54,814 nucleotides of DNA from Macrostomum lignano. Its lineage: Eukaryota. Shown in pieces: positions 27,232 through 49,500 of this stretch. The number at the start of each line of letters is the position of its first letter. Position 1 is the first letter of the stretch. Below the pieces are notes generated by a model. That model was not told the origin of the DNA and did not search any database. It saw nothing but the letters and a program-made list of their open reading frames with translations. The DNA lies in assembly GCA_002269645.1 (NCBI GenBank), contig NIVC01001428.1, positions 1-54,814 of the forward strand, given 5' to 3'. Both the position numbers and the translations under genes were made by a program.

Positions 27232-28476
27232 CTGCCATACCTATAGAATGTGAGAAGTGGTAATGCGTTTTCAAATTTGTTTAACACTTCCTGGAAGTAA
27301 ATTTTCGTAGAAACGTTCGGTCCTCAATGATGTCGCAATACTCGTACCATGGTACCTGAATAACACGTACATGGTTTCAAAATTTTCTATTATAAAACTT
27401 AAAACTTAAAACTTAAACTTAAATATGTTAACGTTAACGGCTAACATGACGGACGAATAATTTTGGCTTGAACCAAATGTCCGGTTGCCGTAATGTCTGG
27501 TTGACAAAATACCAGTTGACGAAATGCCGGTTGACGAAATGTCCTGGAACCTTTCATTGTACAACGCTCAAGCGTGCAGATAAGGCCTATGTCTATGGTA
27601 AAATCCTATAGTCAGTCTATACAAAAAGCGTGCTGATAATAAAAAAGCGTGCAGATAATTGATGTCTATGGCAAAACTTTAACATGGTTTGTCAGTGTGT
27701 ATATTTTAAGTAACACTGACAATATCTTATCTGTCAAGAAACACAGATTTTATCATTCTTTTATTGTGATAAAAGAAACACAATAGTGCAACAGTACTGC
27801 AAAGAACTGTATGAGAGGCGAGGCCTGTGTCACTTTCGCAGTATTGTCCATTTTAAAAGTAGATGTAAAAAAGGTACCGTCATTTTGGCAAATTAAAGGT
27901 GTAACCATTCACGTTTCCATGAAAGCTGAGTGTCAAGGCCGAATGCAGATTAGCGATGCTGGTGAATAAAATCCACCGTCAGGCTTACGAGCCGTGCCGT
28001 AGAACACTTGCAGCACACGGTTGATCTTATAGATCTTATATTCCCTGGATAGGCCACTTTGTATGGCGGCAATAGGGAAAGTGCGACTTGTGCGAAAAAA
28101 AGCCGACATGGGTTGCTTAAATTTTGAGTTCAGTAGCTCGTGGACATGGACGCTATTTTTTGAGAATGTGATAGAACTTTGACGAATTAAATAAAAAGCT
28201 ACTCAATCAAATTAAGAATGGTGCTTGCACTGCAGAGACTACTGACGAAATTGAGTTCAAAAGCTGATTTTCGCGCTTTCGCGAAACGCAAAACTTTTTA
28301 CAATAGCTTCTATGAACCCAAAGCGGTTAACGAGTGGCCCATCTTGTGTATAAATGATCTTTGGTCTCGATAAACTTTCTTAAAGACTCATTCACGCCCC
28401 CCATCAAATAAGGCCACATTTCGTGTGATCACACAATTTGTACATCAAATTTTCTTCTTTAATTATACATCGGTAG

Positions 28477-29414
28477 TGTAGTGCATGCGCCCTTGTCAGT
28501 TGGCAGGGCGCGTTGCACTTTGGGGCTGGTTGGGGGGGTTGGCGGGCGTGGCGGGCGTGGCAGGGTTTGGCCGCCGGCCGGGCTTTGCGCGTGCCCCTCC
28601 CCAGCCGTGCCCCTGCCCCGTGCTCAGGGCTGGTTGGCTGCGGCCGGGCCAGCTTTGGCGCGGGTGCTGCCCCTCCCCCCTTAGGCGGGGTTTTGATTGG
28701 CTGGGCCGGCGTGGTTTGTTTTGGTGAGCTTAGCCGGTGGGGCCGTCTGCCCAGGGTTTGGGTGCTATTTATGGTGCGACTCTGGCTCTTGCCCACCTCC
28801 TGCGTGCTTTTTGTGTTTTGGTGTGCTCCGAGAGTGCAAGCGCGAGACCTGATAAATGAAACAGCAACATTAGCTACTTCGATAAAAGAAACAGCAACAT
28901 TAGCTACTTCGATAAAAGAAACAGCAACATTAGCTACTTCGATAAAAGAAACACAATAGCCTAATTGAGAAGAGTCTTGGAGAATTAAGAAGAAGTCGGA
29001 AACTGCGCTTGAGACCTGCGAATAATAAACGGTGAACAGTCATCTGGCCACTGGTAAGCCGCCTGCTGTTTGAGTCCTTTCTTTTCGGGAAGCTTGCTAG
29101 GCCGAATTCTTGCCAGAGCGTCATAACGCCGGGAGACCATATAGCTTCTGTAGTACGGTACCGTTTACCATATATATTGCGTACGCCCTACGGTATAGAG
29201 AATAGAAGCACTCGAGAGTGTCACCACACCTCGAGCCGCAGCGTGAACTCTGAGTGTCACAACACCAGAGGGATCGAATTATTATCGCAGAGCGTCGCCA
29301 CGCCTGCTCGTCGTATTCATAAAAGTACAGACAGAGCGTCACAACGCCTGTTATATCACATATAATATATATTGTACTCGGGACTGGGCACCCAAGCCGA
29401 CCCGGGTTACAACA
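28477..29414 (+). repeat. 5' LTR (GC-rich 5' part, internal 30-bp tandem x3 at about 28851-28950, AATAAA at 29024)
   Basis: Direct repeat of 37629-38566, differing visibly only in two C-run lengths. Confidence 0.95.
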
Positions 29415-29417
29415 AAT

Positions 29418-29435
29418 TGGCGCCCGAACAGGGAC
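29418..29435 (+). promoter_or_regulatory. Primer-binding site complementary to tRNA-Lys(UUU)
   Basis: TGGCGCCCGAACAGGGAC begins 4 nt after the LTR end and is the 18-mer known as the tRNA-Lys3 PBS. Confidence 0.92.
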
Positions 29436-29659
29436 CCTGTCCCCAAAGATTGAAAGTCGGCTCAGTTGCTTTCTATGAAAATTGCTGTCATATTGTGAGC
29501 GTTTTTTCTTATTAAAACGACTGTTGCTTATCGCTTGCGGCTATTGCCCTACCGCAAAAGACATTGATCACGGTGACAGACAACTGATTGGTTATCAGAG
29601 ATCGATAGCTATCACCACCTCAGAGTAAAGAGTAGCAACGGTATTCAGTGACTTCGGCC

Positions 29660-30580
29660 ATGGGTGATCAAGCTATGGACCAACTGATCGATGCGCTGGC
29701 TGCGCGCCTCAGAGCCAACGCCGACCGAGCAGCGCCACGACTCTCGAAGCCGCCCAAGTACATACCAACGATGAATTTCAGCCTATGGCTGCAGAGTTTC
29801 AACGAGTACTGCGAGGCTGTCGGTATAGAAGAAGAAGCCAGGCGGCCGCACCTGATCGGCCTACTCGACCTCACAACAGCCTACGCTGCCGTTGATAAGC
29901 TGGACTTGGCAGACGACATCGAGTACGGGGAATTCACGGATGCACTACTGGCGCGGTTCACCATGAACAGAACAGCCCAGGACTACCGTTTTGAATTATC
30001 GAATCGAGATCAGCTAGACAAGGAGTCTGTGGAGACCTACGGGGACGAGCTGCTGGAGTTGGTGCGCAATGCCTTCCCCACCGCGGATGCCGACACCAGG
30101 ACAGAGCTGGCGAAAGACAGATTTCTAAAAGGCGTTCGAGTAACCGACACTGTCCGAGAAAGACTGTACCTGCAGCAGCCGGCCAACCTCACCGATGCCA
30201 TTCGAACAGTAAGACAACTTGAAGCAGCCCAGAAGGCGTCTTCGACCCAGTCCAAAGCCAGACCCAGGGCTGGGCTGAATGCCTTTGCCACCGAAACGTC
30301 GACAGGTGACACCGGCAAAGACGAGGAGCTACGCCAACTGCGTCAAAAAGTAAAGGAAATGGAAGAAAAGATCCGACGGATGGAGCAGATGCAGCAGGGC
30401 CAGCAGGAGCCGCCCGAACCCGGCCTTCAAGACAAGCAACAATCCAAGCAGGCGGCTCCGTCCAGCTCGAAGCAGCGTAGCGGTGTCAAGTGCTACAACT
30501 GCGGGGAGATAGGCCATCTCTCATTCCAGTGCCCAAAGCCGGGAAAAGGCAAGAGGGGCCCACCAGCTGGAGGCAAGTGA
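29660..30580 (+). CDS. gag: Gag (capsid-like region plus CCHC zinc knuckle)
   Basis: Intact ORF with CYNCGEIGHLSFQC knuckle. First ATG at 29660. Confidence 0.93.
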   Translation: MGDQAMDQLIDALAARLRANADRAAPRLSKPPKYIPTMNFSLWLQSFNEYCEAVGIEEEARRPHLIGLLDLTTAYAAVDKLDLADDIEYGEFTDALLARFTMNRTAQDYRFELSNRDQLDKESVETYGDELLELVRNAFPTADADTRTELAKDRFLKGVRVTDTVRERLYLQQPANLTDAIRTVRQLEAAQKASSTQSKARPRAGLNAFATETSTGDTGKDEELRQLRQKVKEMEEKIRRMEQMQQGQQEPPEPGLQDKQQSKQAAPSSSKQRSGVKCYNCGEIGHLSFQCPKPGKGKRGPPAGGK

Positions 30581-33500
30581 GCCCCTGCAATTCGTCAGCC
30601 TCCGAACAAGCCGTCATCTCATCTCATCATCATCAAACGCCCGGTACCGCATCTCATCAACCTCCAGTGTCCGGTACTGCGCCTCATCAGAATCCAGTGT
30701 CCGGTACTGCGCCTCATCAGCATCCAGTGTCCGGTACCGCGCTTCATCAGCCTCCAGTGTCCGGTACTGCGTCTCGTCAGCCTCCAGTGTCCGGTACAGT
30801 ACCTCATCAGCATCCAGTGTCCGGTACTGCGGCTCATCAGCATCCAGTGTCCGATACTGCGCCTCATCAGCATCCAGTGTCCGGTACAGCGTCTCATCAG
30901 CCTCCAGTGTCCGGTACTGCGTCTCATCAGCATCCAGTGTCCGGTACTGCGCCTCATCAGCATCCAGTGTCCGGTACAGCGTCTCATCAGCCTCCAGTGT
31001 CCGGTACTGCGTCTCATCAGCATCCAGTGTTCGGTACAGTACCTCATCAGCATCCAGTGTCCGGTACTGCGCCTCATCAGCATCCAGTGTCCGGTACTGC
31101 GCCTCATCAGCATCCAGTGTCCGGTACAGCGTCTCATCAGCCTCCAGTGTCCGGTACTGCGTCTCATCAGCCTCCAGTGTCCGGTACAGTATCTCATCAG
31201 CATCCAGTGTCCGGTACTGCGTCTCATCAGCCTCCAGTGTCCGGTACAGTATCTCATCAGCATCCAGTGTCCGGTACTGCGTCTCATCAGCCTCCAGTGT
31301 CCGGTACTGCGTCTCATCAGCATCCAGTGTCCGGTACAGTGCCTCATCAGCCCCCAGCGTCCGGTACTGCACCTCACCATCAACTAGCCGGTTTTGCACA
31401 GTCGCAGCGCCCAATCACCGTCAACGCACCTCAGTCAATTCAAATCAATCCTGCGTCGATATATGTTACGGCCTCAATCGCAGGGCGGAGGGTGAACGCG
31501 CTAGTGGACTCGGGAGCTTCCTGCACCATTATCTCACGGGAAGCTTACCAAAGTATGCCGAAACAGAGCGTCAGAGATTTGGCCGGTGCTGAAGGCTACG
31601 TTAGCTTAGCAAACGGCAGCCCGATCGAAATCGAGAGGACAGTCCTGTTGCGACTGTCAATCGCTGATAAAGTAATAGATACTCCAGCCTTGGTAGTCAG
31701 CGGAGTGAAGTACCAACTGGTATTGGGATCCGACTTCTGCAGGGACAACAGTTGCGTCATCGACTACAAGAGAGCTGTCTTTTCAGTGCAGGACTCTGCA
31801 ATCCCGTTCCGATGGCAAGCTGAGCGCCCGATCGTTTGCAGAATTTTGGCGACAAGGTCCAGCACAATACCGCCAGGTCATCAAGCAGTGCTGTCAGCAA
31901 GGCTGGAGAGCAAAGGACGACGGAACAGAGGGTGTGTCGGTCTAACTGAGAATCTCGGGGCGAACGATTTGGCAGCTGGCCGCTGGCTTGCTAAGGCCTT
32001 AGTGATCCCAAATAGCGGCAGCCGTCTGCCGACTCGACTCATCAATATCACGGAGGAGCCAGTCAGAATTCGCCAAGGTTGTACGCTCGGGTGGTTCTGC
32101 CCCCTAGAATCCACCGAACCGTTGAACACCATCAAGCTCTTAGCCGTAGAGTCAGGAGACGATCCACAGGAAGAGCCGAAGTTCCAAGGCAGCGACAGCC
32201 CTTCGGAAGCAGACTTGCTACCAAACTCGTACGGCGACTGTGGACTGTCGACGAAAGAAGACGAAGAATTTAGAATCCTTGTCCGGAGTTACGGCGATGT
32301 GTTCACGACCAAGCAGACTTCAAGCAAGTTAACTACCGTGGTGGAGCATGAAATTAACACCGAGAATGCGCGCCCAATCAAGATCCCACCGCGTCGTCTG
32401 CCTCCCCACTTACAGCCAGAAGTAGATCGTCAAGTCAACGAGTTGCTGGAAAAGGGGCAGATCGAAGAAGCACAGTCACCATGGTGCTTTCCTTTGGTGT
32501 GCGTAAAGAAGAAATCAGGGGAAATGAGGATGTGCGTCGATTATCGGAAGTTGAATGAGGTCACCGTCAAGGATGCAGTGCCGATGCCGAGGGTCGATGA
32601 TGCGCTGGAGGCAGTACACGGCGCCAAGATCTTCTCGACAATGGACCTTCACAGCGGGTTTTGGCAAGTAGGGGTGAGACCTCAGGATCAGGACAAGACG
32701 GCGTTTGCAGTGCCGCATCGCGGACAATTTCGATGGAAGGTTATGCCGTTCGGCTTAGTGAACAGCCCAGCAACATTCACCAGGTTGATGGCAGCCGTTT
32801 TGGACAAGCAGATGTGGAAAACCTGTCTCGTCTACATCGACGATCTACTGGTTTGGTCAACCGACGTGGATGAACACCTGAGAAGACTGGAGGAAATATT
32901 CAGCAAGTTGCGGCAAGCAAATTTGTGCCTGAAGCCCCAGAAGTGTCACTTTTTGCAAAAGCAAGTGAAATTTCTCGGTCACACGCTGTCGGCTGCTGGC
33001 ATCAGTACCGATGAGGAGAAAGTTCAAGAAGTGAAGAACTGGCCAACACCGCGATCCTCGACGGAGCTGCATTCATTCTTGGGCCTGTGTGGCTATTACA
33101 GAAAGTTTATTAAAGATTTCGCCGCAATAGCAGCGCCTCTAACTCGATTGACAACAAAAGACGCAAAGTTTGAATGGAAAACGGAACAGCAGCTGGCGTT
33201 CGAAACATTGAAGGAACGAATGACAAGTTCAGAGGTTATGGCTCATCCGGATTTCTCCCCGGATGCCGGAGAGTTTATCCTCGATACTGATGGCAGTTCG
33301 AAGATGGGCATAGGAGCGGTACTTTCTCAAGTCCAGCCAGATGGAGCAGAACGAGTGATCGCCTATGGGTCCAAGACACTAAATCAAGCCGAACGCAACT
33401 ATTGTACGACTCGTTTAGAACTACTAGCGGTTGTGACTTTCATCATGAAGTTCAGATACTATCTGCTTGGAAAAGCGTTCTGTCTGCGAACGGACCACAG

Positions 33501-35277
33501 CAGCCTGCAATGGTTAAAAAACTTCAGTGACGCCGAGGGACAGGTTGCTCGCTGGTTGGAGAAGTTGGCTCCATTTCAGTACCGCATCGTTCACAGACCA
33601 GGTCGATCGCATGGCAACGCGGACGCAATGTCGAGGAAGCCAGTACGGAGACATTTCGGAGCGGAGACATGCCCGGCATGTGCGCAGCATCCAGAAGGAC
33701 TAAATGCAGTCGAATTTGAACGATTCTCAGCCGGCAATCTGGCAAGCGAGCAGGATCAAGACGACGATTTGAGAACAGTAAAGGAAGCGCTTGGCTCAAA
33801 CCCAGTTCCAGATAAAAGCGAGACAGCTTGGAGTCCACTGGCTAGAGCCGTCTGGACTCGAAAAGACGACCTGGTGCTGCAAGAGAACGTGCTCCTTGTG
33901 AGAAACAAAGACAGGCGCGATGAGTATCAAATGGTGCTGCCACGAAAGGCATTGGATCGTATCTTGAAAACCCTACACGAGGGAGTGGGAGGTGGCCACA
34001 TGGGCTTTGCGAAGACAAAATTTAAAGTGCTTCAGCGCTACTGGCGTCCAGGATTGTCTCGTGCCATTGAAGAATATATTCGCGGTTGTGCCACCTGCTG
34101 CAAGTCAAAGCCGGGCAAGCGAAACCGAGCACCCCTGCAACCGTTGACATTCGCAGCACCATTCGATTGCGTCATGATGGACATTGTCGGGCCGCTACCG
34201 CGGAGTAAGGCTGGAAACATTTATCTCCTGACAGTCCAAGATTCGTTTACGAAGTGGCCTGACGCGTACCCGCTTCGCAACCAGAAGGCAAGGACGGTGG
34301 CAAGGGCGCTTTTCAATCGATGGATTAGCCAGCATGGATGTCCGAGTACTTTGCACAGTGACCAAGGAAGGAACTTCGAATCGCAAGTGATGCGCGAAAT
34401 GTGCAGGATACTCGAGATCCGCAAGTCCAGAACCACAGCTTATCATCCGAGCGGAAATGGACAAGTAGAAAACTTCAATAAAAGTTTAAAATCCATCCTC
34501 AAGTGCTGCCTAGAGGACTCAGGACGAAACGACTGGGAAGAATTCGTCAGCTCTGCGTTAATGGCGTACCGATCAAGCGTGCATCGAGCAACGGGTTATA
34601 CTCCCCACTACATGGTCTATGGCACGGAGATGCGCCTACCGATAGACTTGACTGACCAGCCGCCACAGCCTGTCGATTCGCATGTAAATTTCGTCAAGGA
34701 GCTAGAAGACAAATTGCAGACAGCTCATCGCGCTGCTCGACAGCAGTTGAATACTTATCAGCGGCGACAGAAGGACCAGTACGATAAAAGAACCCGAGGA
34801 TCCGATATTCAGGAGGGTGACCATGTCTTCGTCTACAGCCCCGCCCTGAAACCAGACGAAGCCGCAAAGTTTCACGTAAGCTGGCTCGGCCCAGTGAAGG
34901 TGCTCGAAAGAAGATCCGAGGTGCTCTTCAAAGTGGAAAACCCGTCAAATCGTAAAAAGTCGAAGTTCGTCCACTTCAACAACCTCCGGAAGTTCGCTCG
35001 ACCGGCCGCCCTGGAAACACCAGTTAGGACCGCGGCACCGCCGGAGGTGGTCGACGAGACGGACTCGGAGACAGAGGCGGAATGCGAGACTTGGACTCGG
35101 CCTCAACTGATGCCGCCACAGGACGCCGAGGAAGTCGCCGAGGTGCTGGAAGAGCAGATGGAGTTGGTTGACGACCCGCAGCCTACTCATAACCCGGTGG
35201 AAGCTGCACCTGAGCCTCGAAGGTCCGGAAGGTTGCGACGGCCGCCGGATCGCTACGGCCAGCCAGTGACATTCTAA
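30490..35277 (+). CDS. pol: Pol polyprotein (repeat spacer, aspartic protease, RT, RNase H, integrase), in the -1 frame relative to gag
   Basis: ALVDSGAS (PR), YIDD (RT), DTDGS..LELLAV..TDH..NADAMSR (RH), H..H..C..C plus DIVGPL..SDQG..VENFN (IN). No stops over 1595 codons and no chromodomain seen. Confidence 0.96.
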   Translation: MLQLRGDRPSLIPVPKAGKRQEGPTSWRQVSPCNSSASEQAVISSHHHQTPGTASHQPPVSGTAPHQNPVSGTAPHQHPVSGTALHQPPVSGTASRQPPVSGTVPHQHPVSGTAAHQHPVSDTAPHQHPVSGTASHQPPVSGTASHQHPVSGTAPHQHPVSGTASHQPPVSGTASHQHPVFGTVPHQHPVSGTAPHQHPVSGTAPHQHPVSGTASHQPPVSGTASHQPPVSGTVSHQHPVSGTASHQPPVSGTVSHQHPVSGTASHQPPVSGTASHQHPVSGTVPHQPPASGTAPHHQLAGFAQSQRPITVNAPQSIQINPASIYVTASIAGRRVNALVDSGASCTIISREAYQSMPKQSVRDLAGAEGYVSLANGSPIEIERTVLLRLSIADKVIDTPALVVSGVKYQLVLGSDFCRDNSCVIDYKRAVFSVQDSAIPFRWQAERPIVCRILATRSSTIPPGHQAVLSARLESKGRRNRGCVGLTENLGANDLAAGRWLAKALVIPNSGSRLPTRLINITEEPVRIRQGCTLGWFCPLESTEPLNTIKLLAVESGDDPQEEPKFQGSDSPSEADLLPNSYGDCGLSTKEDEEFRILVRSYGDVFTTKQTSSKLTTVVEHEINTENARPIKIPPRRLPPHLQPEVDRQVNELLEKGQIEEAQSPWCFPLVCVKKKSGEMRMCVDYRKLNEVTVKDAVPMPRVDDALEAVHGAKIFSTMDLHSGFWQVGVRPQDQDKTAFAVPHRGQFRWKVMPFGLVNSPATFTRLMAAVLDKQMWKTCLVYIDDLLVWSTDVDEHLRRLEEIFSKLRQANLCLKPQKCHFLQKQVKFLGHTLSAAGISTDEEKVQEVKNWPTPRSSTELHSFLGLCGYYRKFIKDFAAIAAPLTRLTTKDAKFEWKTEQQLAFETLKERMTSSEVMAHPDFSPDAGEFILDTDGSSKMGIGAVLSQVQPDGAERVIAYGSKTLNQAERNYCTTRLELLAVVTFIMKFRYYLLGKAFCLRTDHSSLQWLKNFSDAEGQVARWLEKLAPFQYRIVHRPGRSHGNADAMSRKPVRRHFGAETCPACAQHPEGLNAVEFERFSAGNLASEQDQDDDLRTVKEALGSNPVPDKSETAWSPLARAVWTRKDDLVLQENVLLVRNKDRRDEYQMVLPRKALDRILKTLHEGVGGGHMGFAKTKFKVLQRYWRPGLSRAIEEYIRGCATCCKSKPGKRNRAPLQPLTFAAPFDCVMMDIVGPLPRSKAGNIYLLTVQDSFTKWPDAYPLRNQKARTVARALFNRWISQHGCPSTLHSDQGRNFESQVMREMCRILEIRKSRTTAYHPSGNGQVENFNKSLKSILKCCLEDSGRNDWEEFVSSALMAYRSSVHRATGYTPHYMVYGTEMRLPIDLTDQPPQPVDSHVNFVKELEDKLQTAHRAARQQLNTYQRRQKDQYDKRTRGSDIQEGDHVFVYSPALKPDEAAKFHVSWLGPVKVLERRSEVLFKVENPSNRKKSKFVHFNNLRKFARPAALETPVRTAAPPEVVDETDSETEAECETWTRPQLMPPQDAEEVAEVLEEQMELVDDPQPTHNPVEAAPEPRRSGRLRRPPDRYGQPVTF
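30625..31380 (+). repeat. 30-bp coding tandem repeat, about 25 copies of HQ(H/P)PVSGTA(S/P)
   Basis: Unit CCAGTGTCCGGTACTGCGTCTCATCAGC(A/C)T, in frame with pol. Confidence 0.95.
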
Positions 35278-35700
35278 TGGGTTACTCGTCATCGTGAAGT
35301 CTCATCAGTTTCATATGCGATTATCGTTAAAAGCCAGAAAAATATTTCGCGAATGCGTCATTCATCATAAATACGAGTACTTCATCAATGCATCATTCAT
35401 CATGAGTACGAGCAGTTCGCCAATGCGTCATTCAAGAAATTCGTTAATGCGTCATTAAGTCATTTTAATCGCATCTTCATCGAAGTTTTGACGAGAATCA
35501 AATTTTGCCTACAAAATCTATGCATCGGTGGAGGGTATTCGGACTGGCATCCGGTGACAACTCGAATTTGCGCTGGGACTTTACGATGCAGGGTACCGCG
35601 GGCCACGGTCCGAGGAGATGACGCTCTGGCAAGAGGGGAGCAGGAGTAGAATCTGGAGTCAGGGACAGTGTGTCGCAGGTTTGAGTACGTTGCTTTGCAG

Positions 35701-36735
35701 ATGGATTTGTACGCTGTCCTCCAAGTCGGACACACAGCCGAACGTGCCGAGATCAGGCGAGTCTATCGACAGCTAGCGCTCTTCTGGCACCCGGACAAGC
35801 ACCCGGACAAGGAACTCGCAGGACGCCGTTTCCAAGAAATTGAGACTGCTGGTAGAATTCTATCGTGTCCATATCGCCGAGCGATGTACGACCAGTTGGG
35901 CGATAAATCAATCCCGTATGACGAGGCTGTAACCTTCGCAATGACGTTCATACCTCCTACTGGTGTAAGAATGCCGGCGGACATCGAAGAGGGAGTACAG
36001 CAAAGGCGAGAAGTTGAAGAAGCTCAGCGCAAGGAAGCTGGTCTCAGGCAGGGGAGACAGGGACAGAGGAACGATTACGAAGCGGATGGCTACATTCTAA
36101 TCTCGGACGACGATGAGAGCGAGGAGTCGGATGAGTGTAGCATCGACACAGAAGAAGAAGACGAGTTGCTGGCATCGGATGGCTCCTCCGGAAGTAGTGA
36201 GTCAGAAGCTATGGAGATCGATGTACCGGAAAGCAAGGAGGTTGTCTCACATCGCGCGTCGGGAGCAATATGGGATGATGAAAAGCTGTCGTTATCGGCA
36301 GCTGCGCGTCAGCTCCGCCATCGTTTGATGAAGCATATTTTGGCTGGACAGTCGGACGGAATCGTGTCAGTGCTCACGGCTATGAGACGGCTGTTTCGAG
36401 ACTCGCAGCGAGAACCGAGGAGCGCACTGTCAATGGTCCTGCTGCAGGCGTTGTTCTTCATCCGCAGAGATATCGCTCCGGTAAAGCGTCAGAGAGCAGG
36501 CCGCCGTTACTGGTCTAGGCAGAGTTTTGATTGTTTCGTCCGACAGCTCTGTCACGAGCTCATCCCGCTGTTCGGTTTGCGCCGGCCCGGCAGGCTGCTC
36601 GAGGTCCTGAAAAGCTGCGTCGGTCTCCCTGGACTTCGGGTTCGCTGGGTGCCCAGTTCCGATTCATACTGTATTTTCTACTTACTTGTATGTATGTTGT
36701 TACGCTCGTACTGTATGGGTTTATTTGCATGCTAG
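35701..36735 (+). CDS. Retrotransposon accessory ORF3: N-terminal DnaJ/Hsp40 J-domain, acidic linker, unknown C-terminal domain (344 aa)
   Basis: MDLYAVLQV..AEIRRVYRQLALFWHPDKHPDKELAGRRFQEIETAGRILSCPYRRAMYDQLG matches all four J-domain helices and the HPD motif (35788-35796). It lies between pol and the PPT. Confidence 0.88.
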   Translation: MDLYAVLQVGHTAERAEIRRVYRQLALFWHPDKHPDKELAGRRFQEIETAGRILSCPYRRAMYDQLGDKSIPYDEAVTFAMTFIPPTGVRMPADIEEGVQQRREVEEAQRKEAGLRQGRQGQRNDYEADGYILISDDDESEESDECSIDTEEEDELLASDGSSGSSESEAMEIDVPESKEVVSHRASGAIWDDEKLSLSAAARQLRHRLMKHILAGQSDGIVSVLTAMRRLFRDSQREPRSALSMVLLQALFFIRRDIAPVKRQRAGRRYWSRQSFDCFVRQLCHELIPLFGLRRPGRLLEVLKSCVGLPGLRVRWVPSSDSYCIFYLLVCMLLRSYCMGLFAC

Positions 36736-36769
36736 TGGGGTCAAGCTTCCTGGGGGAATGGCTCAGCAG

Positions 36770-37380
36770 CTGTGCGGCGGCCACGTGCGCTTCCTGCCGG
36801 CTTCTGCGGCGGCCACGTGCGCTTCCTGCCGGCTTCTGCGGCGGCCACGTGCGCTTCCTGCCGGCTTCTGCGGCGGCCACCTGCGCTTCCTGCCGGCTTC
36901 TGCGGCGGCCACCTGCGCTTCCTGCCGGCTTCTGCGGCGGCCACGTGCGCTTCCCGCCCGGCCATCTGCGCGCCTCGCCCGGCCGCCTTCGCGTCTTGCC
37001 GGCCACCTGCGTGCCCTGTCGGCCATCTGCGCGTCCTGTCGGCAACCTGCGTGCCCTGTCGGCCATCTGCGCGTCCTGTCGGCAACCTGCGCTTCCTGCC
37101 CGGCCATCTGCGCGTCCTGTCGGCAACCTGCGCTTCCCGCCCGGCCATCTGCGCTTCCTGCCGGCCACCTGCGTGCCCTGCCGGTTATCTGCACTTCCTG
37201 CCGGCCACCTGCGTGTCCTGCCGGCCACTTGCGCGTCCTGCCGGCCACCTGCGCGTCCCGCCCGGCCACCTGCGTGCCCTGCCGGCCATCTGCACTTCCT
37301 GCCGGCCATCTGCACTTCCTGCCGGCCACCTGCGCGTCCCGCCCGGCCACCTGCGCGTCCTGCCGGCCACCTGCGATGGT
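36770..37380. repeat. GC-rich compound minisatellite (32-bp units, then 20/24-bp units) in the element's 3' region
   Basis: CCACGTGCGCTTCCTGCCGGCTTCTGCGGCGG repeats, then GGCCA(T/C)CTGCG(C/T)G(T/C)CCTG(T/C)C repeats. Confidence 0.92.
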
Positions 37381-37616
37381 TTTCTGTGGCGCCAGCTTTG
37401 ATGTAAAGCCTATTCCGTGCCCCGTGGTTGCTCTGACGAACTTGCGTGCAGAAAACCAGTATTTTTTTTCATATTTCTTTTGCGGCAACCATTTTTCTTT
37501 TTCCCCTTTGCATTAGTGTGTTTCCAATTTTTTTGTTGTTTTTGATTTTTTTGCTTTGTTATTTAAAAAATTTGGAATCCCAGTCGCCGTGGTTCGAGCT
37601 CCGCCCTGTTTTTTTT

Positions 37617-37628
37617 AGGAGGGGAGGG
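37617..37628 (+). promoter_or_regulatory. Polypurine tract
   Basis: AGGAGGGGAGGG immediately before the 3' LTR, preceded by a T-run. Confidence 0.9.
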
Positions 37629-38566
37629 TGTAGTGCATGCGCCCTTGTCAGTTGGCAGGGCGCGTTGCACTTTGGGGCTGGTTGGGGGGGTTGGCGGGCG
37701 TGGCGGGCGTGGCAGGGTTTGGCCGCCGGCCGGGCTTTGCGCGTGCCCCTCCCCAGCCGTGCCCCTGCCCCGTGCTCAGGGCTGGTTGGCTGCGGCCGGG
37801 CCAGCTTTGGCGCGGGTGCTGCCCCTCCCCCTTAGGCGGGGTTTTGATTGGCTGGGCCGGCGTGGTTTGTTTTGGTGAGCTTAGCCGGTGGGGCCGTCTG
37901 CCCCAGGGTTTGGGTGCTATTTATGGTGCGACTCTGGCTCTTGCCCACCTCCTGCGTGCTTTTTGTGTTTTGGTGTGCTCCGAGAGTGCAAGCGCGAGAC
38001 CTGATAAATGAAACAGCAACATTAGCTACTTCGATAAAAGAAACAGCAACATTAGCTACTTCGATAAAAGAAACAGCAACATTAGCTACTTCGATAAAAG
38101 AAACACAATAGCCTAATTGAGAAGAGTCTTGGAGAATTAAGAAGAAGTCGGAAACTGCGCTTGAGACCTGCGAATAATAAACGGTGAACAGTCATCTGGC
38201 CACTGGTAAGCCGCCTGCTGTTTGAGTCCTTTCTTTTCGGGAAGCTTGCTAGGCCGAATTCTTGCCAGAGCGTCATAACGCCGGGAGACCATATAGCTTC
38301 TGTAGTACGGTACCGTTTACCATATATATTGCGTACGCCCTACGGTATAGAGAATAGAAGCACTCGAGAGTGTCACCACACCTCGAGCCGCAGCGTGAAC
38401 TCTGAGTGTCACAACACCAGAGGGATCGAATTATTATCGCAGAGCGTCGCCACGCCTGCTCGTCGTATTCATAAAAGTACAGACAGAGCGTCACAACGCC
38501 TGTTATATCACATATAATATATATTGTACTCGGGACTGGGCACCCAAGCCGACCCGGGTTACAACA
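37629..38566 (+). repeat. 3' LTR
   Basis: Direct repeat of 28477-29414, followed by the GTAG TSD. Confidence 0.95.
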
Positions 38567-39583
38567 GTAGTGATGGTGGCTCATTTGATGGCCTAGTATA
38601 ACTGTATAAATATGATTATAAACTCCAAAAAGATGCAGTTTTATGGTAAGCATGTAAAGGCCCTGTAATAAATCATCTGCAAGATCTTTATCGATATTTG
38701 GCCAAAAAATGTACAATCATCTTGTGACGAATATCTGGTCCGAGAGTTCGCATGCTGACGGACTGCTATTCAAGTAGTGATTGAACACACAGTTAGTGGT
38801 GACCGATAACTGACGGAGCCGATTATTCGATTACGGATTATGTATATTTGTAGGTTACAGACACGAACGGTACATGTATATAGCTGATGCTAAACAGGTA
38901 ATTGGTAACGAACAGCTGTAGTGTCGATGGAATGGCTTCGAAGATGACCTTAGTGGGAATTAGTTAATTGAGAGCGATTTTGAACTACTGTTTATCAATG
39001 TTTACGGAAATCAAATTTGCTGGCCATAGGAACAGCAGCCGAACTCCATGTACGAGTTAGTCCTCTCCGAAGCCAAAGAATTCAAAATGTTAAATATAAC
39101 TATTTCAATTCAGTAAAACAAAGCATTGTTTACTTTTGTCGATAAACATAAAAATGAAACCATCTGATATTAATAACATACATATTAAATATTTTTAGTA
39201 GATATTAATCGATGAATTGAAATAATAAAAAGAACCACCAACGTACGTCACAATCTTATTGTGGCAGGCGAGGCCGCCACTGGCTTTTCCCACAGCGTGT
39301 AACTCTATTTTTCGCCGCGCGATTTCCCTTTGCCGTAATTTTACGTCATCCTGACGTCACGCGCGCTACAGTTAATGTAACTCCCCGTTCCACTCCGTGT
39401 ATTTTTCGTTCGTTTTAATGCTTTTGAATAGGGGTCCACCCGGTGTTTAGTCGTCACCACCCGGTGTTACCCCGTCCCTTTTTCTATCCGGTGTCGCTCT
39501 CTCCCCACCCGGGGTAACCCCTTTCCTCCCGGTGGCTCATGAGAGCGCTATTTAAGAGTCTGCGCCCCGCCTTTCCCAGCCAG

Positions 39584-39715: not shown

Positions 39716-40427
39716 GTTTTGCCCCGATCCCTTGTGAGACCGACTTCCGTGGTATTGCCCATCTTCTTTAACTCTAATACAGTCCATTACGAGAGGCCCC
39801 TACGTGTAAGCCCGACATCCCGACCCGACCAGCTCCTCACCCAGCCAGCTAATTATTATCTCTTAATAATAACATCATAGTACATTGCTTGTGGCTCGTG
39901 CAACAGTTAATAACAATAATACGTGCTATTCAGCTACCTGGCCCCTTTAACGCCAGCCAAGTAATCTCTTGTATGGAAACGGTGTCTTAGCCTTCGTGAC
40001 CTCGGAAGCTTTATTTGACCTAGCGGTCTCAAGAGAAGTCCTAGAGCCAACTCGAGCTAGTTTTGAGCTCTAGAGAGCTTTTCCCATGTATAACCGCGGT
40101 GGTGGCAGCAAACTACTACTATTAGCAACAATCTCGACAAACTTAGCTTATTTTGAAGTTTTCCCCATTTCGGCTACAAATTTCTGCATTCGGCATTCTG
40201 GATGTCGGAAAAACTAGACCGCTCTGCCGCGACCACAGCTACCCTCCCCTTGAGCCTGAGGAACTCAGCAGCCGGAGCTCCCCGTCATCTGCAAGCCGAG
40301 ATCCTCGCTTAAGTTTGTTTGAATCGTAGAAACCGCACCGATTTGAACGGCTGAGATGAACGAATTAAATCTCGACCAATCAACACAGACGAAACCCTCC
40401 GACCTTATTATCATCTGTGAGAATATA

Positions 40428-41735
40428 CGAGGGATACTCCAAAAGTTTTGCAATTCAACCACTTGCGCAAGTCGCACAATCTTCAAAACCAACTCTCTGT
40501 ACAATAAACATGTACATAGTCCCCACCTCAATTTTCAAGTGAATTCATACATATACGCCTGCTCAGCCCCCAGTCAAAGTCAGAGACCCCTTAACTGTAC
40601 AGCTGCAGCCATGGAATTGAATCGTGAGCAGAATCGGCTACTAATTTGGTACTGCCACAAGCGAAAGCTCACGGCGCTTGAGACTCATGCCGAGCTACTA
40701 GCAACATTGGAGGCTCAAGCGCCGTCATATGCTACGGTTACACGCTGGTACCGCGAGTTCCAGGCCAGCAGGACCAGCTTTTCTGACGACCCCCGGCCCG
40801 GGAGACCTCCGACAGCAGTGACGGAGGAAAACATCGCTGCAGTGCAGGAGCTGATTCATCAGGATCCGCGAATCACCACGGACATGCTAGCTATGAATGT
40901 CAGCATTGAATCGGCAACGGTCGATACGATTCTACACGATCACCTGAGAGTCAGGAAGCTTTGTGCCCGATGGATACCCCACATCCTGACAGATGCTCAG
41001 AAACAGGCCCGCATGGAGTTCTGTCAGTTTCTCATCGATCAATATGAGCATGGGAGCCATCAGCGCCGCTCTGAGGTCATCACTGGTGATGAGACGTTTC
41101 TCTATCATTTTGACGTCGAGACAAAGCGCAGCAGTGCAGAGTGGGTGCCGGAAGGTGGGCAACGACCCCTGAAAGCAAGGCGGTCCCGGTCCCAGGGCAA
41201 GCGGATGTTTGCCATCTTCTTCGACTCACAAGGCGTGGTGGCGATGGAGAAGCTGGAGGGTCAAGCTACAGTCACTGCTCGATGGTACACTGAAGAGTGC
41301 TTGCCAGTCGTGATCGACAGCGTGACCCAGAGGGCACCAAGGACGGGAATGCGAGGGCGGAAACTTCACCATGACAACGCCCCCGCCCATACGGCTGCTG
41401 CAACTCGAGCGTTCCTGGACCAAGAGGGCATTTCAACGCTACCACACCCGCCCTACTCACCCGACCTCGCCCCCTGCGACTTCTGGCTCTTTCCAGAAAT
41501 CAAAAAATCGCTTAGGGGGCGCAGGTTTCAGTCCGACGAGGAGCTGGAGCAGGCGGCGAAGGAGACGATTGACGGCATCCCAATTGAAGACTTCCAGGGC
41601 TTGATGAACAAGTGGCTCGGACGAGCGCACAAGTGTTTGCAGTTCCGGGGAGCCTACTTTGAAGGATTGTAATAGAAAAGTTTGCCAAAATTAACTTTAA
41701 ATAGTCGAATTGCAAAACTTTTAGAGTATCCCTCG
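40428..41735 (+). mobile_element. Intact mariner transposon (1308 bp)
   Basis: 29-bp TIRs CGAGGGATACTC(C/T)AAAAGTTTTGCAATTC with one mismatch, TA on both sides, single transposase ORF. Confidence 0.96.
40611..41672 (+). CDS. Mariner DD34D transposase (353 aa)
   Basis: WIPHIL, TGDET, HHDNAPAH, YSPDLAPCD with 34 residues between the second and third D. Confidence 0.95.
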   Translation: MELNREQNRLLIWYCHKRKLTALETHAELLATLEAQAPSYATVTRWYREFQASRTSFSDDPRPGRPPTAVTEENIAAVQELIHQDPRITTDMLAMNVSIESATVDTILHDHLRVRKLCARWIPHILTDAQKQARMEFCQFLIDQYEHGSHQRRSEVITGDETFLYHFDVETKRSSAEWVPEGGQRPLKARRSRSQGKRMFAIFFDSQGVVAMEKLEGQATVTARWYTEECLPVVIDSVTQRAPRTGMRGRKLHHDNAPAHTAAATRAFLDQEGISTLPHPPYSPDLAPCDFWLFPEIKKSLRGRRFQSDEELEQAAKETIDGIPIEDFQGLMNKWLGRAHKCLQFRGAYFEGL

Positions 41736-42052
41736 TATGTTGGCAAACGCTGCCGAAAATGGTGTTTCTGGATTACCATAATCTGTGGCCTATATTCGAA
41801 AGATATGCGAATATGAATCCGTGATATGAATTTCAAAAACAGCATTTTTAGTTCAGTAGATCAAAGCGGCAAAGCCCCATAGAAAAAATTATGGAGGTCA
41901 TGCTGTTAAAAAATTAATAGTTTTGTTAGTCCTAGACCAAATTTATAAAATGTCTTTGTACTATTAGAATTTCATTGGCCCTGGACATTCTACCTACACT
42001 ACACGACTTTATAGTTCTTAGGTTCTTTCGCGTTTTTTTTGGTATTAAATTT

Positions 42053-42647
42053 GGTTTCAACCTACTTCGGCGAAAGAATTTTCGGCGAAAGTCAAAAACG
42101 GCGAAAAATACTTTCGCAATGACCATTTGTCTAAAGCTGACCATTTCGGCGAAAAATTTATTCTAAGCTTCGCTGAGAAGTTTTTTGTTTTAGAAGTAAG
42201 CTAAAAAAACGACGAACTTTAAAAAGACTAATTTTATCTTAGCATGTTTTTGTTTTGTCGCAGTTTAATTTAGTTGTTTTATTAGATGCCCTTCCATTAC
42301 GGCGGAATTTCAAAGTACGATTTTAAGAGCCTGGTGATTTAATCTGAAAAACCACACCGTCATCATCCCTAATCTATTGACTGCATATCGATAGATCGCA
42401 TGTACATAACATAGCTACGAGCTAAGTCATGAGTTTTTTAATTTTCTAACTGCAAATAATTTGCAGCAATGAACAATTTATTAAAAGCTATAATCACCAA
42501 AGTGGTATATTTGCAATATATACGTAGCCCATCTTTTCGCCGCACTGGTCACTTTCTTTCGCCGAAATGTACATCTATTGAAACTTAAAATTCACTTTCG
42601 CTGAAGCGTCCTTCGCCGAAAATTCTTTCGCCGAAATGGGCTGCACC
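42053..42647. mobile_element. Non-autonomous TIR element with TTCGGCGAAA subterminal repeats
   Basis: Imperfect GG..CC TIRs flanked by (A/C)TTAAATTT (8-9-bp TSD). A related fragment lies at about 18270-18420. Confidence 0.6.
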
Positions 42648-45600: not shown

Positions 45601-46408
45601 CATGAAAAAAGTCAAAATGTAACATCAATAGGCATAAGTAAGTAACAATGCATTGACAGTCGCAGATAAAACAAAATAACAATATTTAAAATGTCTCTGA
45701 AAGAATGAATCACTAAAGATCAAAATGTTTGGCGTTGTTTATCAGAAAACCTACACCTTACAGGAATTTTTCAACAGTAGACAAGTGTCATGCAATTAAG
45801 ACAGGGCTAAATAAGTTCATAAATATTGAAAACACAGCCGTAAAATATCCACAAGCTCACAGATAAAGGTTTTCCCCTATATTTTCAGTCATTGTCCCAT
45901 AGACAAAAATAGTACACGTACACAAAAGAGCGTTATGAAACAAAAAAACGTACTTAAAGTACAAGTCAGAAAAATACGTTTTCGGTCGCTATCGCCACGA
46001 TAAAAGCATAAGCTCTGGCTAAAAGTTTAAAGACACATTTTTCAATCAGTTTTTTATAAATAAAAGTTAAATTTATGTACAAATACTTCTGGTTTAACAA
46101 TTAAATTCATGCTGAAAGAAAAAATTTGTTTATAACTTACGTATATTTCAATTTGAGATTTACCCTCCATAGTTCAAATCATATATTAATGTATGCCACA
46201 GTCCAATCAGTGGGGAAAAGCATGCTTTTGTTTGTATGCTAGGACTAAAAATATGTCATTAAGAGTGTTTGTGTTTCTACTATATTTGTATCATCATGTA
46301 GGCTTATACTAGGATGTTTATTAAAGTAATGTATATTGAAAATTGCTAATACCTCTATTGTAACTTGTATGCCAGGAAATCCTAGCATACATGATATATG
46401 TCAATTGC

Positions 46409-49419: not shown

Positions 49420-49500
49420 ATGGCAGAAAGCAATGACCAACCAGTTCCCAAAACGGAATTGGAAGAAATTCAACTTCTAATGAATCAAAAAACTGATGAG
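49420..49500 (+). CDS. Snap25: SNAP-25-family first coding exon (partial gene)
   Basis: MAESNDQPVPKTELEEIQLLMNQKTDE followed by a GTATGT donor. It resembles invertebrate SNAP-25 (VPKTELEE..ADE), and the intron falls after D-E as in SNAP-25 genes. Downstream exons were not found in the window. Confidence 0.72.

What the first reader, a model, noticed from the sequence alone, without database searches (positions are those of the whole stretch)
35701..36735. Ty3/gypsy retrotransposon carrying an intact DnaJ/Hsp40 J-domain gene in the env position
Seen: between pol and the PPT of a complete, young element is an uninterrupted, intronless 344-aa ORF. Its first 67 aa form a canonical J-domain with an intact HPD, oddly duplicated as a perfect 12-nt tandem (HPDK-HPDK). 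No env-like signal peptide is present. Established: J-domains recruit and activate Hsp70; polyomavirus T antigens carry one; pestiviruses depend on host DNAJC14/Jiv; retroviral and retrotransposon RT folding and particle assembly use Hsp70/Hsp40 chaperones. Inference: this lineage captured a DNAJB-like module and may encode its own co-chaperone for Gag/Pol folding, particle assembly or anti-silencing. I know of no described J-domain-encoding LTR retrotransposon family, but could not search.
Basis: partly seen in the sequence, partly recalled or inferred. Interest (0 to 1): 0.92.

Follow-up and report, generated by a model that had tools for sequence, protein, structure and literature searches.

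The report
Flatworm retrotransposons encoding a J-domain co-chaperone
A young Ty3/gypsy-type retrotransposon of the flatworm Macrostomum lignano carries, where retroviruses carry env, a conserved third gene for a J-domain (Hsp40-type) protein; the gene is shared by at least seven diverged element lineages, so the elements appear to bring their own adaptor for the host's Hsp70 chaperone.

Summary
The window is a whole Macrostomum lignano contig. A 10,090-bp Ty3/gypsy element lies at 28477-38566, with 938-bp LTRs that differ only by two single-base indels. It has a 4-bp target duplication, PBS, PPT, and open gag and pol. Between pol and the PPT sits ORF3 (35701-36735), whose first 64 residues match Pfam DnaJ end to end (E 6e-18).

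ORF3 is not a one-off passenger. All six sibling copies examined carry it, and four have different target duplications. A second M. lignano family (pol 56% identical) and five environmental or read-archive lineages also carry it, always directly after pol. All keep HPD. Non-synonymous differences stay well below saturated synonymous ones.

The protein has a J domain, an acidic linker and a novel five-helix domain. It has no G/F region, so it is class C, not DNAJB. One sister family adds a chromodomain. A splice-acceptor-like AG abuts the ORF3 start in 7/7 lineages.

Two details need correction. 'HPDK-HPDK' is the ordinary J-domain loop with one substitution, not an insertion. The 344-aa length is specific to this copy; three siblings have 315 aa.

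No paper in the library describes such an element. Function is inferred, not shown.

The parts
28473..28476 (+). Target-site duplication, 5' copy (GTAG)
   Evidence: The same 4 nt directly flank both LTRs.
28477..29414 (+). 5' LTR (938 nt, TG..CA). It contains a 30-nt x 3.4 tandem repeat at 28851-28953.
   Evidence: Alignment of the two LTRs: identical except for two single-base indels. Repeat. No canonical heat-shock element.
29418..29435 (+). Primer-binding-site-like 18-mer, 3 nt after the LTR
   Evidence: Read directly from the sequence. The identical 18-mer lies at the same place in L009 and L010. Which tRNA it matches was not tested.
29660..30580 (+). gag (open; CCHC zinc knuckle; weak Retrotrans_gag/PNMA match)
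   Evidence: 99.7-100% identical in sibling copies.
30490..35277 (+). pol (open, -1 frame relative to gag, overlapping it by 91 nt): protease, RT, RNase H, integrase with the Ty3-type C-terminal domain. A 30-nt x 25 tandem array (30622-31370) lies upstream of the protease.
   Evidence: Pfam. Best PDB relative is Ty3 Gag-Pol 7q5b (E 1.5e-119). Repeats.
35278..35700 (+). pol-ORF3 spacer (423 nt) ending in a pyrimidine-rich tract plus AG (35699-35700), directly abutting the ORF3 ATG. A splice-acceptor-like site.
   Evidence: AG lies 0-2 nt before the ATG in 7/7 lineages against 19.6% of all ATGs. The UniProt model A0A1I8G8I7 uses this AG as an acceptor.
35701..36735 (+). ORF3, J-domain protein gene as it stands in this copy (344 codons plus stop). 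It carries one frame-changing single-base length difference relative to the 315-aa form of three sibling copies.
35704..35892 (+). J domain (residues 2-64), HPD at residues 30-32
   Evidence: Pfam PF00226 E 6.4e-18. PDB sequence hits DNAJB2, HCG3 and E. coli DnaJ at E about 1e-13. Fold match.
36046..36282 (+). Acidic, Ser-rich, predicted-disordered linker (residues 116-194) with a hydrophobic-core-plus-acidic motif
   Evidence: pLDDT below 50. Length varies among lineages. The motif is present in 6/7 lineages.
36298..36630 (+). Conserved C-terminal five-helix domain (residues about 200-310), with no known family
   Evidence: AF2 pLDDT 84.5, pTM 0.80. No Pfam hit. No PDB hit by sequence or by fold (best E 0.5). 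Invariant R/L/G/Q/RD/GRR-W columns.
36773..37375 (+). GC-rich tandem arrays (32-nt x 5.8, 20-nt x 21.6) in the 3' untranslated region of the element
37617..37628 (+). Polypurine tract (AGGAGGGGAGGG), directly before the 3' LTR
   Evidence: The same tract is present in sibling copies.
37629..38566 (+). 3' LTR
38567..38570 (+). Target-site duplication, 3' copy (GTAG)

Best explanation
ORF3 is a genuine, selected third gene of a clade of flatworm-associated Ty3/gypsy (Ty3/Mdg4) LTR retrotransposons. It encodes a class C (type III) J-domain protein.

Shown:
- The gene lies inside the LTRs, directly after pol, in every copy and lineage examined.
- It co-diverges with the adjacent pol.
- It stays open while synonymous sites are saturated.
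- It always keeps the HPD tripeptide and a canonical J fold.

Inferred from what J-proteins are known to do: the J domain docks on the host's Hsp70/Hsc70 and triggers ATP hydrolysis. The rest of the protein decides where this happens. The conserved five-helix C-terminal domain is the likely client- or target-binding module. The variable middle part acts as an address label: an acidic segment with a SUMO-interaction-like motif in most lineages, and a chromodomain in one sister family.

My best guess is that the protein brings Hsp70 remodelling activity to the element's own nucleoprotein complex at a nuclear or chromatin-associated step. That step could be uncoating or remodelling of the particle or integration complex, tethering to chromatin, or dismantling of host repressive complexes. 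I consider general Gag/Pol folding less likely.

Expression is most likely from a processed mRNA whose 5' exon is joined to the conserved acceptor that abuts the ORF3 start codon. The 5' exon could be a cis-spliced leader, as for env genes. [quoted passage not shown]
For: Family-wide presence:
- tblastn finds ORF3 at the same place after pol in 5/5 further M. lignano copies. The first 313 residues are 99.6-100% identical at the nucleotide level.
- Four copies have distinct 4-bp target duplications (GTAG, GAAG, TTTT, CTTA) and LTR pairs 99.3-99.9% identical. ORF3-bearing copies therefore transposed recently and repeatedly.

Clade-wide presence:
- The exhaustive protein search returned full-length homologues at 34-53% identity.
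- Their contigs show an integrase C-terminus directly upstream (L006, L007) or a whole gag-pol-ORF3 unit (L009, L010).
- The closest non-M. lignano pol (P0006, 57%) and an ORF3 homologue (P0143) lie on the same contig and were reached by two independent searches.
- A second M. lignano family (L091; pol 56%, gag 42%) has a 326-aa J-ORF3 99 nt after pol.

Selection:
- pN is 0.32-0.50 against pS 0.68-0.84. dN/dS is 0.16-0.24 where dS can be computed.
- All seven lineages match Pfam DnaJ at E 1e-16 to 1e-19 and keep HPDK.
- ORF3 similarity tracks similarity of the adjacent pol C-terminus (Spearman 0.69).

Architecture. Chromodomain in L091's ORF3: PF00385, E 9e-9, above the cut-off.

Acceptor: AG lies 0-2 nt before the ATG in 7/7 lineages (background 19.6%, binomial P about 1e-5) and directly adjacent in 5/7 (background 7.9%). 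An automatic gene model uses it.
Against: - No expression data were available here: no transcript, junction read or peptide.
- No conserved 5' splice donor was evident in the leaders I could compare.
- The acceptor statistic treats homologous lineages as independent.
- Hsp70 binding is inferred from sequence and predicted fold only.
- The C-terminal domain has no recognisable relative and shows no likeness to the element's gag (hhalign probability 0.4%), so its target is unknown.
- The SUMO-interaction-like motif was defined after looking at the sequences.
- Synonymous sites are saturated, so dN/dS values are rough.
- Within the young family there are too few substitutions to measure selection. 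Three of six copies have a frame-changing difference in ORF3, which may be PacBio assembly error.
- The organisms behind five of the seven lineages are unidentified.
Confidence: 0.7

Rival explanations
1. ORF3 is not a separate protein. It is a spliced C-terminal extension of Pol: removal of a short intron from near the pol stop to the acceptor before the ORF3 ATG would fuse the J-protein to integrase, so that Hsp70 is recruited in cis to integrase or the integration complex.
For: The UniProt model A0A1I8G8I7 joins the pol end (three codons before its stop, GT at 35266) in frame to the ORF3 ATG using the AG at 35699-35700. A Val codon (GTN) lies a few codons before the pol stop in the window, L006, L007 and L091. 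The spacers are short in L009, L010 and L091 (75-99 nt).
Against: That model is an ab initio chimera of 3375 aa that also runs through repeats and unrelated sequence, so it is no evidence of a transcript. Every ORF3 begins with its own ATG directly at the acceptor. Spacer length varies from 75 to 423 nt. The pol C-terminal residues differ among lineages, and L009 and L010 show no conserved donor context. A fusion would make the J-protein as abundant as Pol and no more.
Confidence: 0.12
2. ORF3 is a neutral passenger: a host J-protein gene fragment picked up once and carried along without use to the element.
For: LTR retrotransposons do occasionally transduce host sequence. Within the young M. 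lignano family there is no measurable selection: 0-4 substitutions per copy, of which 3 of 4 in L004 change the residue. Three of six copies have a frame-changing difference in ORF3. One environmental copy (L007) has a disrupted J-domain part.
Against: The gene is retained, open, in seven lineages whose pol proteins are only 47-57% identical and whose synonymous sites are saturated. pN is about half of pS or less. HPD and the J fold are kept in all. The non-J domain is conserved too. The intact sister of L007 exists (P0289). No host protein with the C-terminal domain was found among 1.84 billion representatives.
Confidence: 0.05
3. ORF3 acts mainly against the host, not on the element's own proteins. 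It would use Hsp70 to dismantle or mislocalise repressive chromatin or small-RNA silencing complexes (an anti-silencing factor), or would steer integration towards marked chromatin.
For: One sister family's ORF3 carries a chromodomain between the J domain and the C-terminal domain. Six of seven lineages have a hydrophobic-core-plus-acidic motif of the SUMO-interaction type. A basic G-R-(G)-R-R-x-W loop is invariant. J-domain-dependent disruption of host complexes is what polyomavirus T antigens do (my own knowledge). M. lignano has an active piRNA pathway in stem cells (PMC4604429, abstract seen).
Against: No target is identified. The chromodomain occurs in only one of seven lineages. The motif was defined post hoc. 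Nothing distinguishes this from the best explanation except the identity of the client, and it overlaps with the chromatin-step version of that explanation.
Confidence: 0.13

Closest known systems
LTR retrotransposons with non-env third ORFs. Examples: bdelloid rotifer Juno/Vesta elements with GDSL esterase or DEDDy exonuclease ORF3 (PMC5408684), plant elements with additional ORFs (PMC7264820), C. elegans Cer1 with CERV (PMC10309623).
   Same: An extra, lineage-specific gene sits between pol and the 3' LTR of a gag-pol element. It is acquired from outside and is expected to be expressed from a spliced message (PMC5408684 states this for ORF3s in general).
   Different: None of those ORF3s is a J-domain protein. 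None of the papers read or searched mentions DnaJ, a J domain or a chaperone in an LTR retrotransposon. Here the cargo is a co-chaperone module plus a novel helical domain.
Virus-encoded J-domain proteins: polyomavirus large and small T antigens (my own knowledge), and DnaJ-domain proteins of giant viruses and phages (BFVD hits).
   Same: A mobile genetic parasite encodes a J domain with HPD, and is thereby expected to commandeer host Hsp70 for its own purposes.
   Different: Those are DNA viruses. Their non-J parts are unrelated, and no T antigen came back as a hit in any search here. The present case is a reverse-transcribing element of an animal genome. The fold matches to viral proteins rest on the J domain alone.
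Cellular class B J-proteins DNAJB2/6/8, whose J domains are the nearest by sequence
   Same: The J domain is 40-46% identical. The same helix II basic face, HPD and HPDK-xPD loop are present, and the length is the same within one residue.
   Different: There is no G/F-rich region and no Ser/Thr-rich or DnaJ C-terminal domains. The rest of the protein is unrelated, so by the usual definition it is class C.
Chromoviruses (Ty3/gypsy elements with a chromodomain at the integrase C-terminus; PMC3350952 and my own knowledge)
   Same: A chromodomain is carried by a Ty3/gypsy-type element, seen here in the sister family L091.
   Different: Here the chromodomain sits in the separate ORF3 J-protein, not on integrase. 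The window's own element has no chromodomain at all.
Catalogued M. lignano Ty3/Mdg4 LTR retrotransposon families, some heat-inducible through heat-shock elements in the LTR (PMC12801592)
   Same: Same host and same superfamily. The window's family very probably belongs to the 137 catalogued families.
   Different: That study does not mention ORF3, J domains or chaperones. This element's LTRs hold no canonical heat-shock element.

Membership tests
J-domain protein (DnaJ/Hsp40 superfamily) | Sequence match to the J-domain profile above the curated threshold, over its full length | tested here: met
   PF00226, 65 bits against a cut-off of 27.8, model positions 1-63 of 63. All six other lineages score 58-69 bits.
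J-domain protein (DnaJ/Hsp40 superfamily) | HPD tripeptide in the loop between helices II and III | tested here: met
   HPD at residues 30-32, aligned to the HPD of DNAJB2 and HCG3. Present in 7/7 lineages.
J-domain protein (DnaJ/Hsp40 superfamily) | Four-helix J fold | tested here: met
   AF2 pLDDT 87-91 for residues 1-60. Foldseek matches 2ej7 (rmsd 1.0 A), 6rzy and 5nro_B. This is a predicted structure, not a solved one.
J-domain protein (DnaJ/Hsp40 superfamily) | Stimulation of Hsp70 ATPase | not testable with these tools
   This is a biochemical property. It is inferred only from conservation of HPD and helix II basic residues.
Class B (type II, DNAJB) J-proteins | Gly/Phe-rich region after the J domain and DnaJ-type C-terminal substrate-binding domains | tested here: not met
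   No DnaJ_C or other Pfam hit beyond the J domain. The sequence after residue 67 is Pro/acidic, not G/F. Only the J domain itself is DNAJB-like.
Class C (type III) J-proteins | A J domain combined with unrelated domains, without G/F region or zinc finger | tested here: met
   J domain, acidic linker and a five-helix domain with no known family.
Ty3/gypsy (Ty3/Mdg4, Metaviridae) LTR retrotransposon | Direct LTRs with TG..CA ends, short target duplication, PBS after the 5' LTR, PPT before the 3' LTR | tested here: met
Ty3/gypsy (Ty3/Mdg4, Metaviridae) LTR retrotransposon | gag with a zinc knuckle; pol in the order PR-RT-RNaseH-IN; RT closest to Ty3-type RTs | tested here: met
   Pfam order along pol: 326-416 PR, 672-833 RT, 896-1029 RNase H, 1151-1320 IN, 1467-1500 Ty3 IN C-terminal domain. 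Ty3 Gag-Pol is the best PDB hit at E 1.5e-119, ahead of caulimovirus and retrovirus RTs.
Ty3/gypsy clade assignment (Mag, CsRN1, Gmr1/Osvaldo, Mdg3) | Placement of the RT in a reference (GyDB) phylogeny | not tested
   No reference RT set was available in the tools. PMC12801592 places most M. lignano families in Mag, CsRN1 and Gmr1/Osvaldo.
env-bearing retrovirus-like elements (errantivirus type) | ORF3 product with signal peptide, transmembrane anchor or fusion-protein features | tested here: not met
   Maximum 19-residue hydropathy is 0.9-1.6 in the family's proteins. The only hydrophobic stretch (1.9) is the copy-specific tail of the window's ORF3. No env-type Pfam hit.
Chromovirus | Chromodomain at the C-terminus of integrase | tested here: not met
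   No Chromo hit in the window's pol. The Chromo hit in L091 lies in ORF3, not in pol.

The most novel reading that the evidence does not exclude
A clade of animal LTR retrotransposons has evolved its own Hsp70-recruiting adaptor that works on chromatin. The J domain would power Hsp70-driven remodelling at sites chosen by the C-terminal helical domain together with a chromodomain or a SUMO-interaction-type motif. The result would be either to guide or complete integration or to take apart host silencing complexes. This would be the first retroelement-encoded co-chaperone and a new type of accessory gene for reverse-transcribing elements.
Probability: 0.25. Interest if true: 0.88.

Novelty: new variant of a known kind. 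Interest (0 to 1): 0.72.

Why it matters
Retroviruses and retrotransposons are known to depend on host Hsp70/Hsp40 chaperones. Until now, however, the co-chaperone has always been a host factor. Among mobile elements, J domains were known only from DNA viruses and phages.

A retrotransposon clade that keeps its own J-protein through deep divergence implies that chaperone recruitment can limit a retroelement's success enough to be worth encoding. The non-J part of the protein then marks the step at which it acts.

The host, M. lignano, is a transgenic laboratory model with public RNA-seq, small-RNA and heat-shock data. It also has LTR elements already shown to exploit the heat-shock response (PMC12801592). 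Existing data could therefore show whether and where ORF3 is expressed.

The C-terminal domain is a new fold family with no relatives. The J-plus-chromodomain variant is an unusual domain combination in its own right.

Tried and rejected
1. The first word-indexed protein search with ORF3 gave only four weak generic J-domain hits. The family was found only by the exhaustive search.

2. A metagenome scan with an alignment of three homologues returned 80 loci. All were ordinary J-domain genes: none held the C-terminal domain or an RT.

3. A word-indexed search with the C-terminal-domain alignment found nothing.

4. The C-terminal domain gave:
- no Pfam family;
- only de novo designed helical bundles in the PDB sequence search;
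- no fold match (best E 0.5, TM 0.41 or less);
- no likeness to the element's gag.

5. Heat-shock elements in the LTRs, an attractive link to PMC12801592: none found. The two matches in the window lie outside the LTRs and are at chance level.

6. A conserved 5' splice donor in the leaders was not evident by eye in the four leaders available.

7. Selection among the young M. lignano copies could not be measured: 0-4 substitutions per copy.

8. Organism of the read-archive runs SRR31628392, SRR31628394 and SRR31628435: no paper found. [quoted passage not shown]

9. tRNA genes in the window, to name the PBS primer: none found.

10. The idea that HPDK-HPDK is an insertion was rejected. There is no net length change against the Pfam model, the relatives or DNAJB2. 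A closer relative has HPDKHPDG with an imperfect nucleotide repeat. Given the amino-acid repeat, identical codons are not very improbable (about 1 in 32 with even codon use; my arithmetic).
Full report
**What is there**

The window is an entire 54,814-nt contig of the Macrostomum lignano assembly GCA_002269645.1. Its pol product is 100% identical to a protein named for M. lignano, and one member of that protein cluster sits on a contig of exactly this length. The rest of the window fits an animal genome: an exon of a ligand-gated ion channel and an intact Tc1/mariner-type transposase.

At 28477-38566 lies a 10,090-bp LTR retrotransposon.
- The 938-nt LTRs begin with TG and end with CA. They differ only by two single-base indels in homopolymer runs.
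- GTAG flanks both ends.
- An 18-nt PBS-like sequence starts 3 nt after the 5' LTR. A 12-nt polypurine tract abuts the 3' LTR.
- Gag (29660-30580) has a CCHC knuckle.
- Pol (30490-35277, -1 frame) has protease, RT, RNase H, integrase and the Ty3-type integrase C-terminal domain, in that order.
- Its best solved relative is the Ty3 Gag-Pol polyprotein (E 1.5e-119).

**The finding itself**

ORF3 (35701-36735) is open for 344 codons.
- Residues 2-64 match the Pfam DnaJ model over its whole length (E 6.4e-18).
- The nearest solved sequences are the J domains of human DNAJB2 and HCG3 and of E. coli DnaJ (E about 1e-13).
- The predicted structure is confident for this part and superposes on solved J domains at about 1 A.
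- The perfect 12-nt tandem is real.
- No signal peptide or membrane anchor is present in the family's form of the protein.

**Two corrections**

First, the 'duplicated HPD' is not an insertion.
- The J domain matches the 63-position model with 63 residues.
- In the alignment with DNAJB2, the window's HPDK-HPD lies exactly over HPDK-NPD, the ordinary loop of such J domains.
- The relatives have the same spacing with other residues there.
- The closest relative reads HPDKHPDG with an imperfect nucleotide repeat.
- The second HPD is therefore a one-residue variation on a common motif. Only the first HPD sits at the functional position.

Second, the 344-aa length belongs to this copy only.
- Three sibling copies encode 315 aa, and that end coincides with the ends of the out-group homologues.
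- The window copy, and two other siblings in different ways, each carry one frame-changing single-base length difference in ORF3.
- The assembly derives from PacBio reads (PMC5730564). The only LTR differences are homopolymer indels. These differences may therefore be assembly errors rather than mutations.

**Not a one-off**

Five further M. lignano loci with a pol at least 90% identical all carry ORF3 at the same distance after pol. Identity is 99.6-100% over the first 939 nt. Four full-length copies have different flanks and different 4-bp target duplications, and LTR pairs 99.3-99.9% identical. ORF3-bearing copies have therefore transposed several times recently.

The ordinary protein search missed relatives. 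The exhaustive search found full-length homologues at 34-53% identity. Their contigs show the same arrangement:
- L007 and L006 have an integrase C-terminus upstream.
- L009 and L010 are 7-kb contigs with gag, pol and the J-ORF in a row.
- L009 was reached twice independently, once from ORF3 and once from the closest foreign pol (57% identity).
- Both come from a co-assembly of brackish microbial-mat metagenomes from the Mediterranean coast (PMC8605020). An unidentified small eukaryote is the plausible source.
- A second M. lignano family (L091; pol 56% and gag 42% identical) has a 326-aa J-ORF 99 nt after pol.

That makes seven lineages. All have a full-length J-domain match and HPDK. Similarity of ORF3 tracks similarity of the neighbouring pol C-terminus (Spearman 0.69), as expected for one acquisition followed by co-divergence. 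Synonymous differences are saturated (pS 0.68-0.84) while non-synonymous ones are 0.32-0.50. Where dS can be computed, dN/dS is 0.16-0.24. One environmental copy (L007) has a disrupted J-domain part: three stops when read in the frame of the downstream part. Its intact sister exists (P0289).

**Anatomy of the protein**

After the J domain comes a short conserved stretch. An acidic, Ser-rich segment of variable length follows, predicted to be disordered. The protein ends in a conserved domain of about 110 residues, predicted with confidence as five helices (pLDDT 84.5, pTM 0.80).
- This domain has no Pfam family, no sequence or fold relative in the PDB, and no likeness to the element's gag.
- It was not found in any other protein context among 1.84 billion representatives.
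- There is no G/F region or DnaJ C-terminal domain. The protein is therefore a class C J-protein whose J domain merely resembles DNAJB J domains.
- In six of seven lineages the acidic segment holds a hydrophobic core followed by acidic or Ser residues, the pattern of SUMO-interaction motifs. This is a post hoc pattern and only a lead.
- In L091 the same region holds a chromodomain (PF00385, E 9e-9, above threshold).

**Expression signal**

In all seven lineages an AG lies 0-2 nt before the ORF3 ATG, and in five it directly abuts it. A tract 45-70% pyrimidine precedes it. Among all ATGs of these sequences the frequencies are 19.6% and 7.9%. The spacers themselves vary from 75 to 423 nt.

This looks like a conserved 3' splice site. 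ORF3s of LTR elements are generally expressed from spliced messages (PMC5408684). In M. lignano about 39% of transcripts are trans-spliced, and about 7% of transcription units are polycistronic precursors (PMC5730564). Either a cis-spliced leader or the spliced leader could therefore serve.

An automatic UniProt model (A0A1I8G8I7, 'J domain-containing protein') instead splices the pol end in frame to the ORF3 ATG. That model is a 3375-aa chimera and is not evidence of a transcript, but the Pol-fusion reading is kept as a rival. It also shows that the domain was detected by machine earlier, without being recognised as part of a retrotransposon.

**How it most likely works**

Shown: a conserved, co-diverging, constrained gene for a J-protein inside the element.

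Inferred from the established mechanism of J-proteins: the HPD-bearing J domain docks on Hsp70 and triggers ATP hydrolysis, so that Hsp70 clamps onto whatever the rest of the J-protein holds.

Inferred further: the five-helix domain holds the client, and the middle segment (SUMO-interaction-like motif or chromodomain) directs the protein to nuclear or chromatin sites.

I therefore favour a role at a nuclear or chromatin-associated step over general folding of Gag/Pol. That step could be remodelling of the particle or integration complex, tethering, or removal of repressive host complexes. The client is unknown.

My confidence that ORF3 is a functional element-encoded J-protein is about 0.85. 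For the whole statement, including splicing and the nuclear step, it is about 0.7 at most, with the specific client far less certain.

**Comparison with what is known**

The kind, an LTR retrotransposon with a captured non-env ORF3, is known from bdelloid rotifers, plants and C. elegans (PMC5408684, PMC7264820, PMC10309623). J domains in mobile elements are known from polyomaviruses (my own knowledge) and from giant viruses and phages.

The full-text searches found no paper describing a J-domain or DnaJ gene in an LTR retrotransposon. The recent catalogue of 137 M. lignano LTR families does not mention ORF3, J domains or chaperones. Repbase and Dfam could not be consulted. I rate this a new variant of a known kind.

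**Limits**

- No expression or protein data were available.
- Five lineages come from unidentified organisms.
- The dN/dS values come from saturated comparisons.
- The acceptor statistic ignores shared ancestry.
- The clade within Ty3/gypsy was not determined.

Noticed in passing
L091:12953-13930 (second M. lignano family, contig NIVC01000975.1): The ORF3 of this sister family combines a J domain, a chromodomain (PF00385, E 9e-9) and the same C-terminal helical domain. A J-plus-chromodomain protein encoded by a retrotransposon is an unusual combination.
   Followed up: partly
window 30622-31370: A 30-nt x 25 tandem array lies inside the pol reading frame, between the gag overlap and the protease. 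It encodes a 10-residue Pro/Ser/His-rich repeat. Aligned pol lengths differ among sibling copies, so the copy number varies.
   Followed up: partly
window 36773-37375: About 600 nt of GC-rich tandem arrays (32-nt x 5.8, then 20-nt x 21.6) lie between ORF3 and the polypurine tract. All six reading frames are open across them, which produces several spurious long ORFs.
   Followed up: no
window 35352-35434: A 35-nt x 2.4 tandem repeat lies in the 423-nt pol-ORF3 spacer. The spacer is much longer here than in the related lineages (75-245 nt).
   Followed up: no
window 28851-28953 and 38003-38105: A 30-nt x 3.4 tandem repeat lies in each LTR and may be a repeated regulatory module. LTR length varies among sibling copies (869-938 nt), with the difference in the 5' GC-rich part.
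   Followed up: partly
window 11126-11390 (- strand): A fragment 88.6% identical to the last 270 nt of the LTR. It is a remnant of an older or related insertion.
   Followed up: no
window 40356-41672: An intact 438-aa ORF with HTH and DDE_3/Transposase_1 domains, a Tc1/mariner-type transposase about 1.8 kb downstream of the element.
   Followed up: no
window 21457-22074: An ORF containing the transmembrane region of a neurotransmitter-gated ion channel (PF02932, E 6e-13), presumably an exon of a host gene.
   Followed up: no
window ~42000-50000: An AT-rich block (GC 0.29-0.33) against 0.42-0.61 in the rest of the window.
   Followed up: no
window 29418-29435; L009 and L010 after their 5' LTRs: The same 18-nt primer-binding-site-like sequence is present in the window's family and in both environmental elements. 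The second M. lignano family (L091) has a different one.
   Followed up: partly
UniProt A0A1I8G8I7 (P0139): A 3375-aa automatic gene model named 'J domain-containing protein'. It stitches pieces of this family's pol, ORF3 and the GC-rich repeats to unrelated sequence. The NCBI annotation of the same genome calls pol but not ORF3.
   Followed up: yes
L003 and L091, element ends: The 4 nt flanking the two LTRs do not match in these two copies, unlike the other four. This could reflect recombination between copies or misassembly.
   Followed up: no
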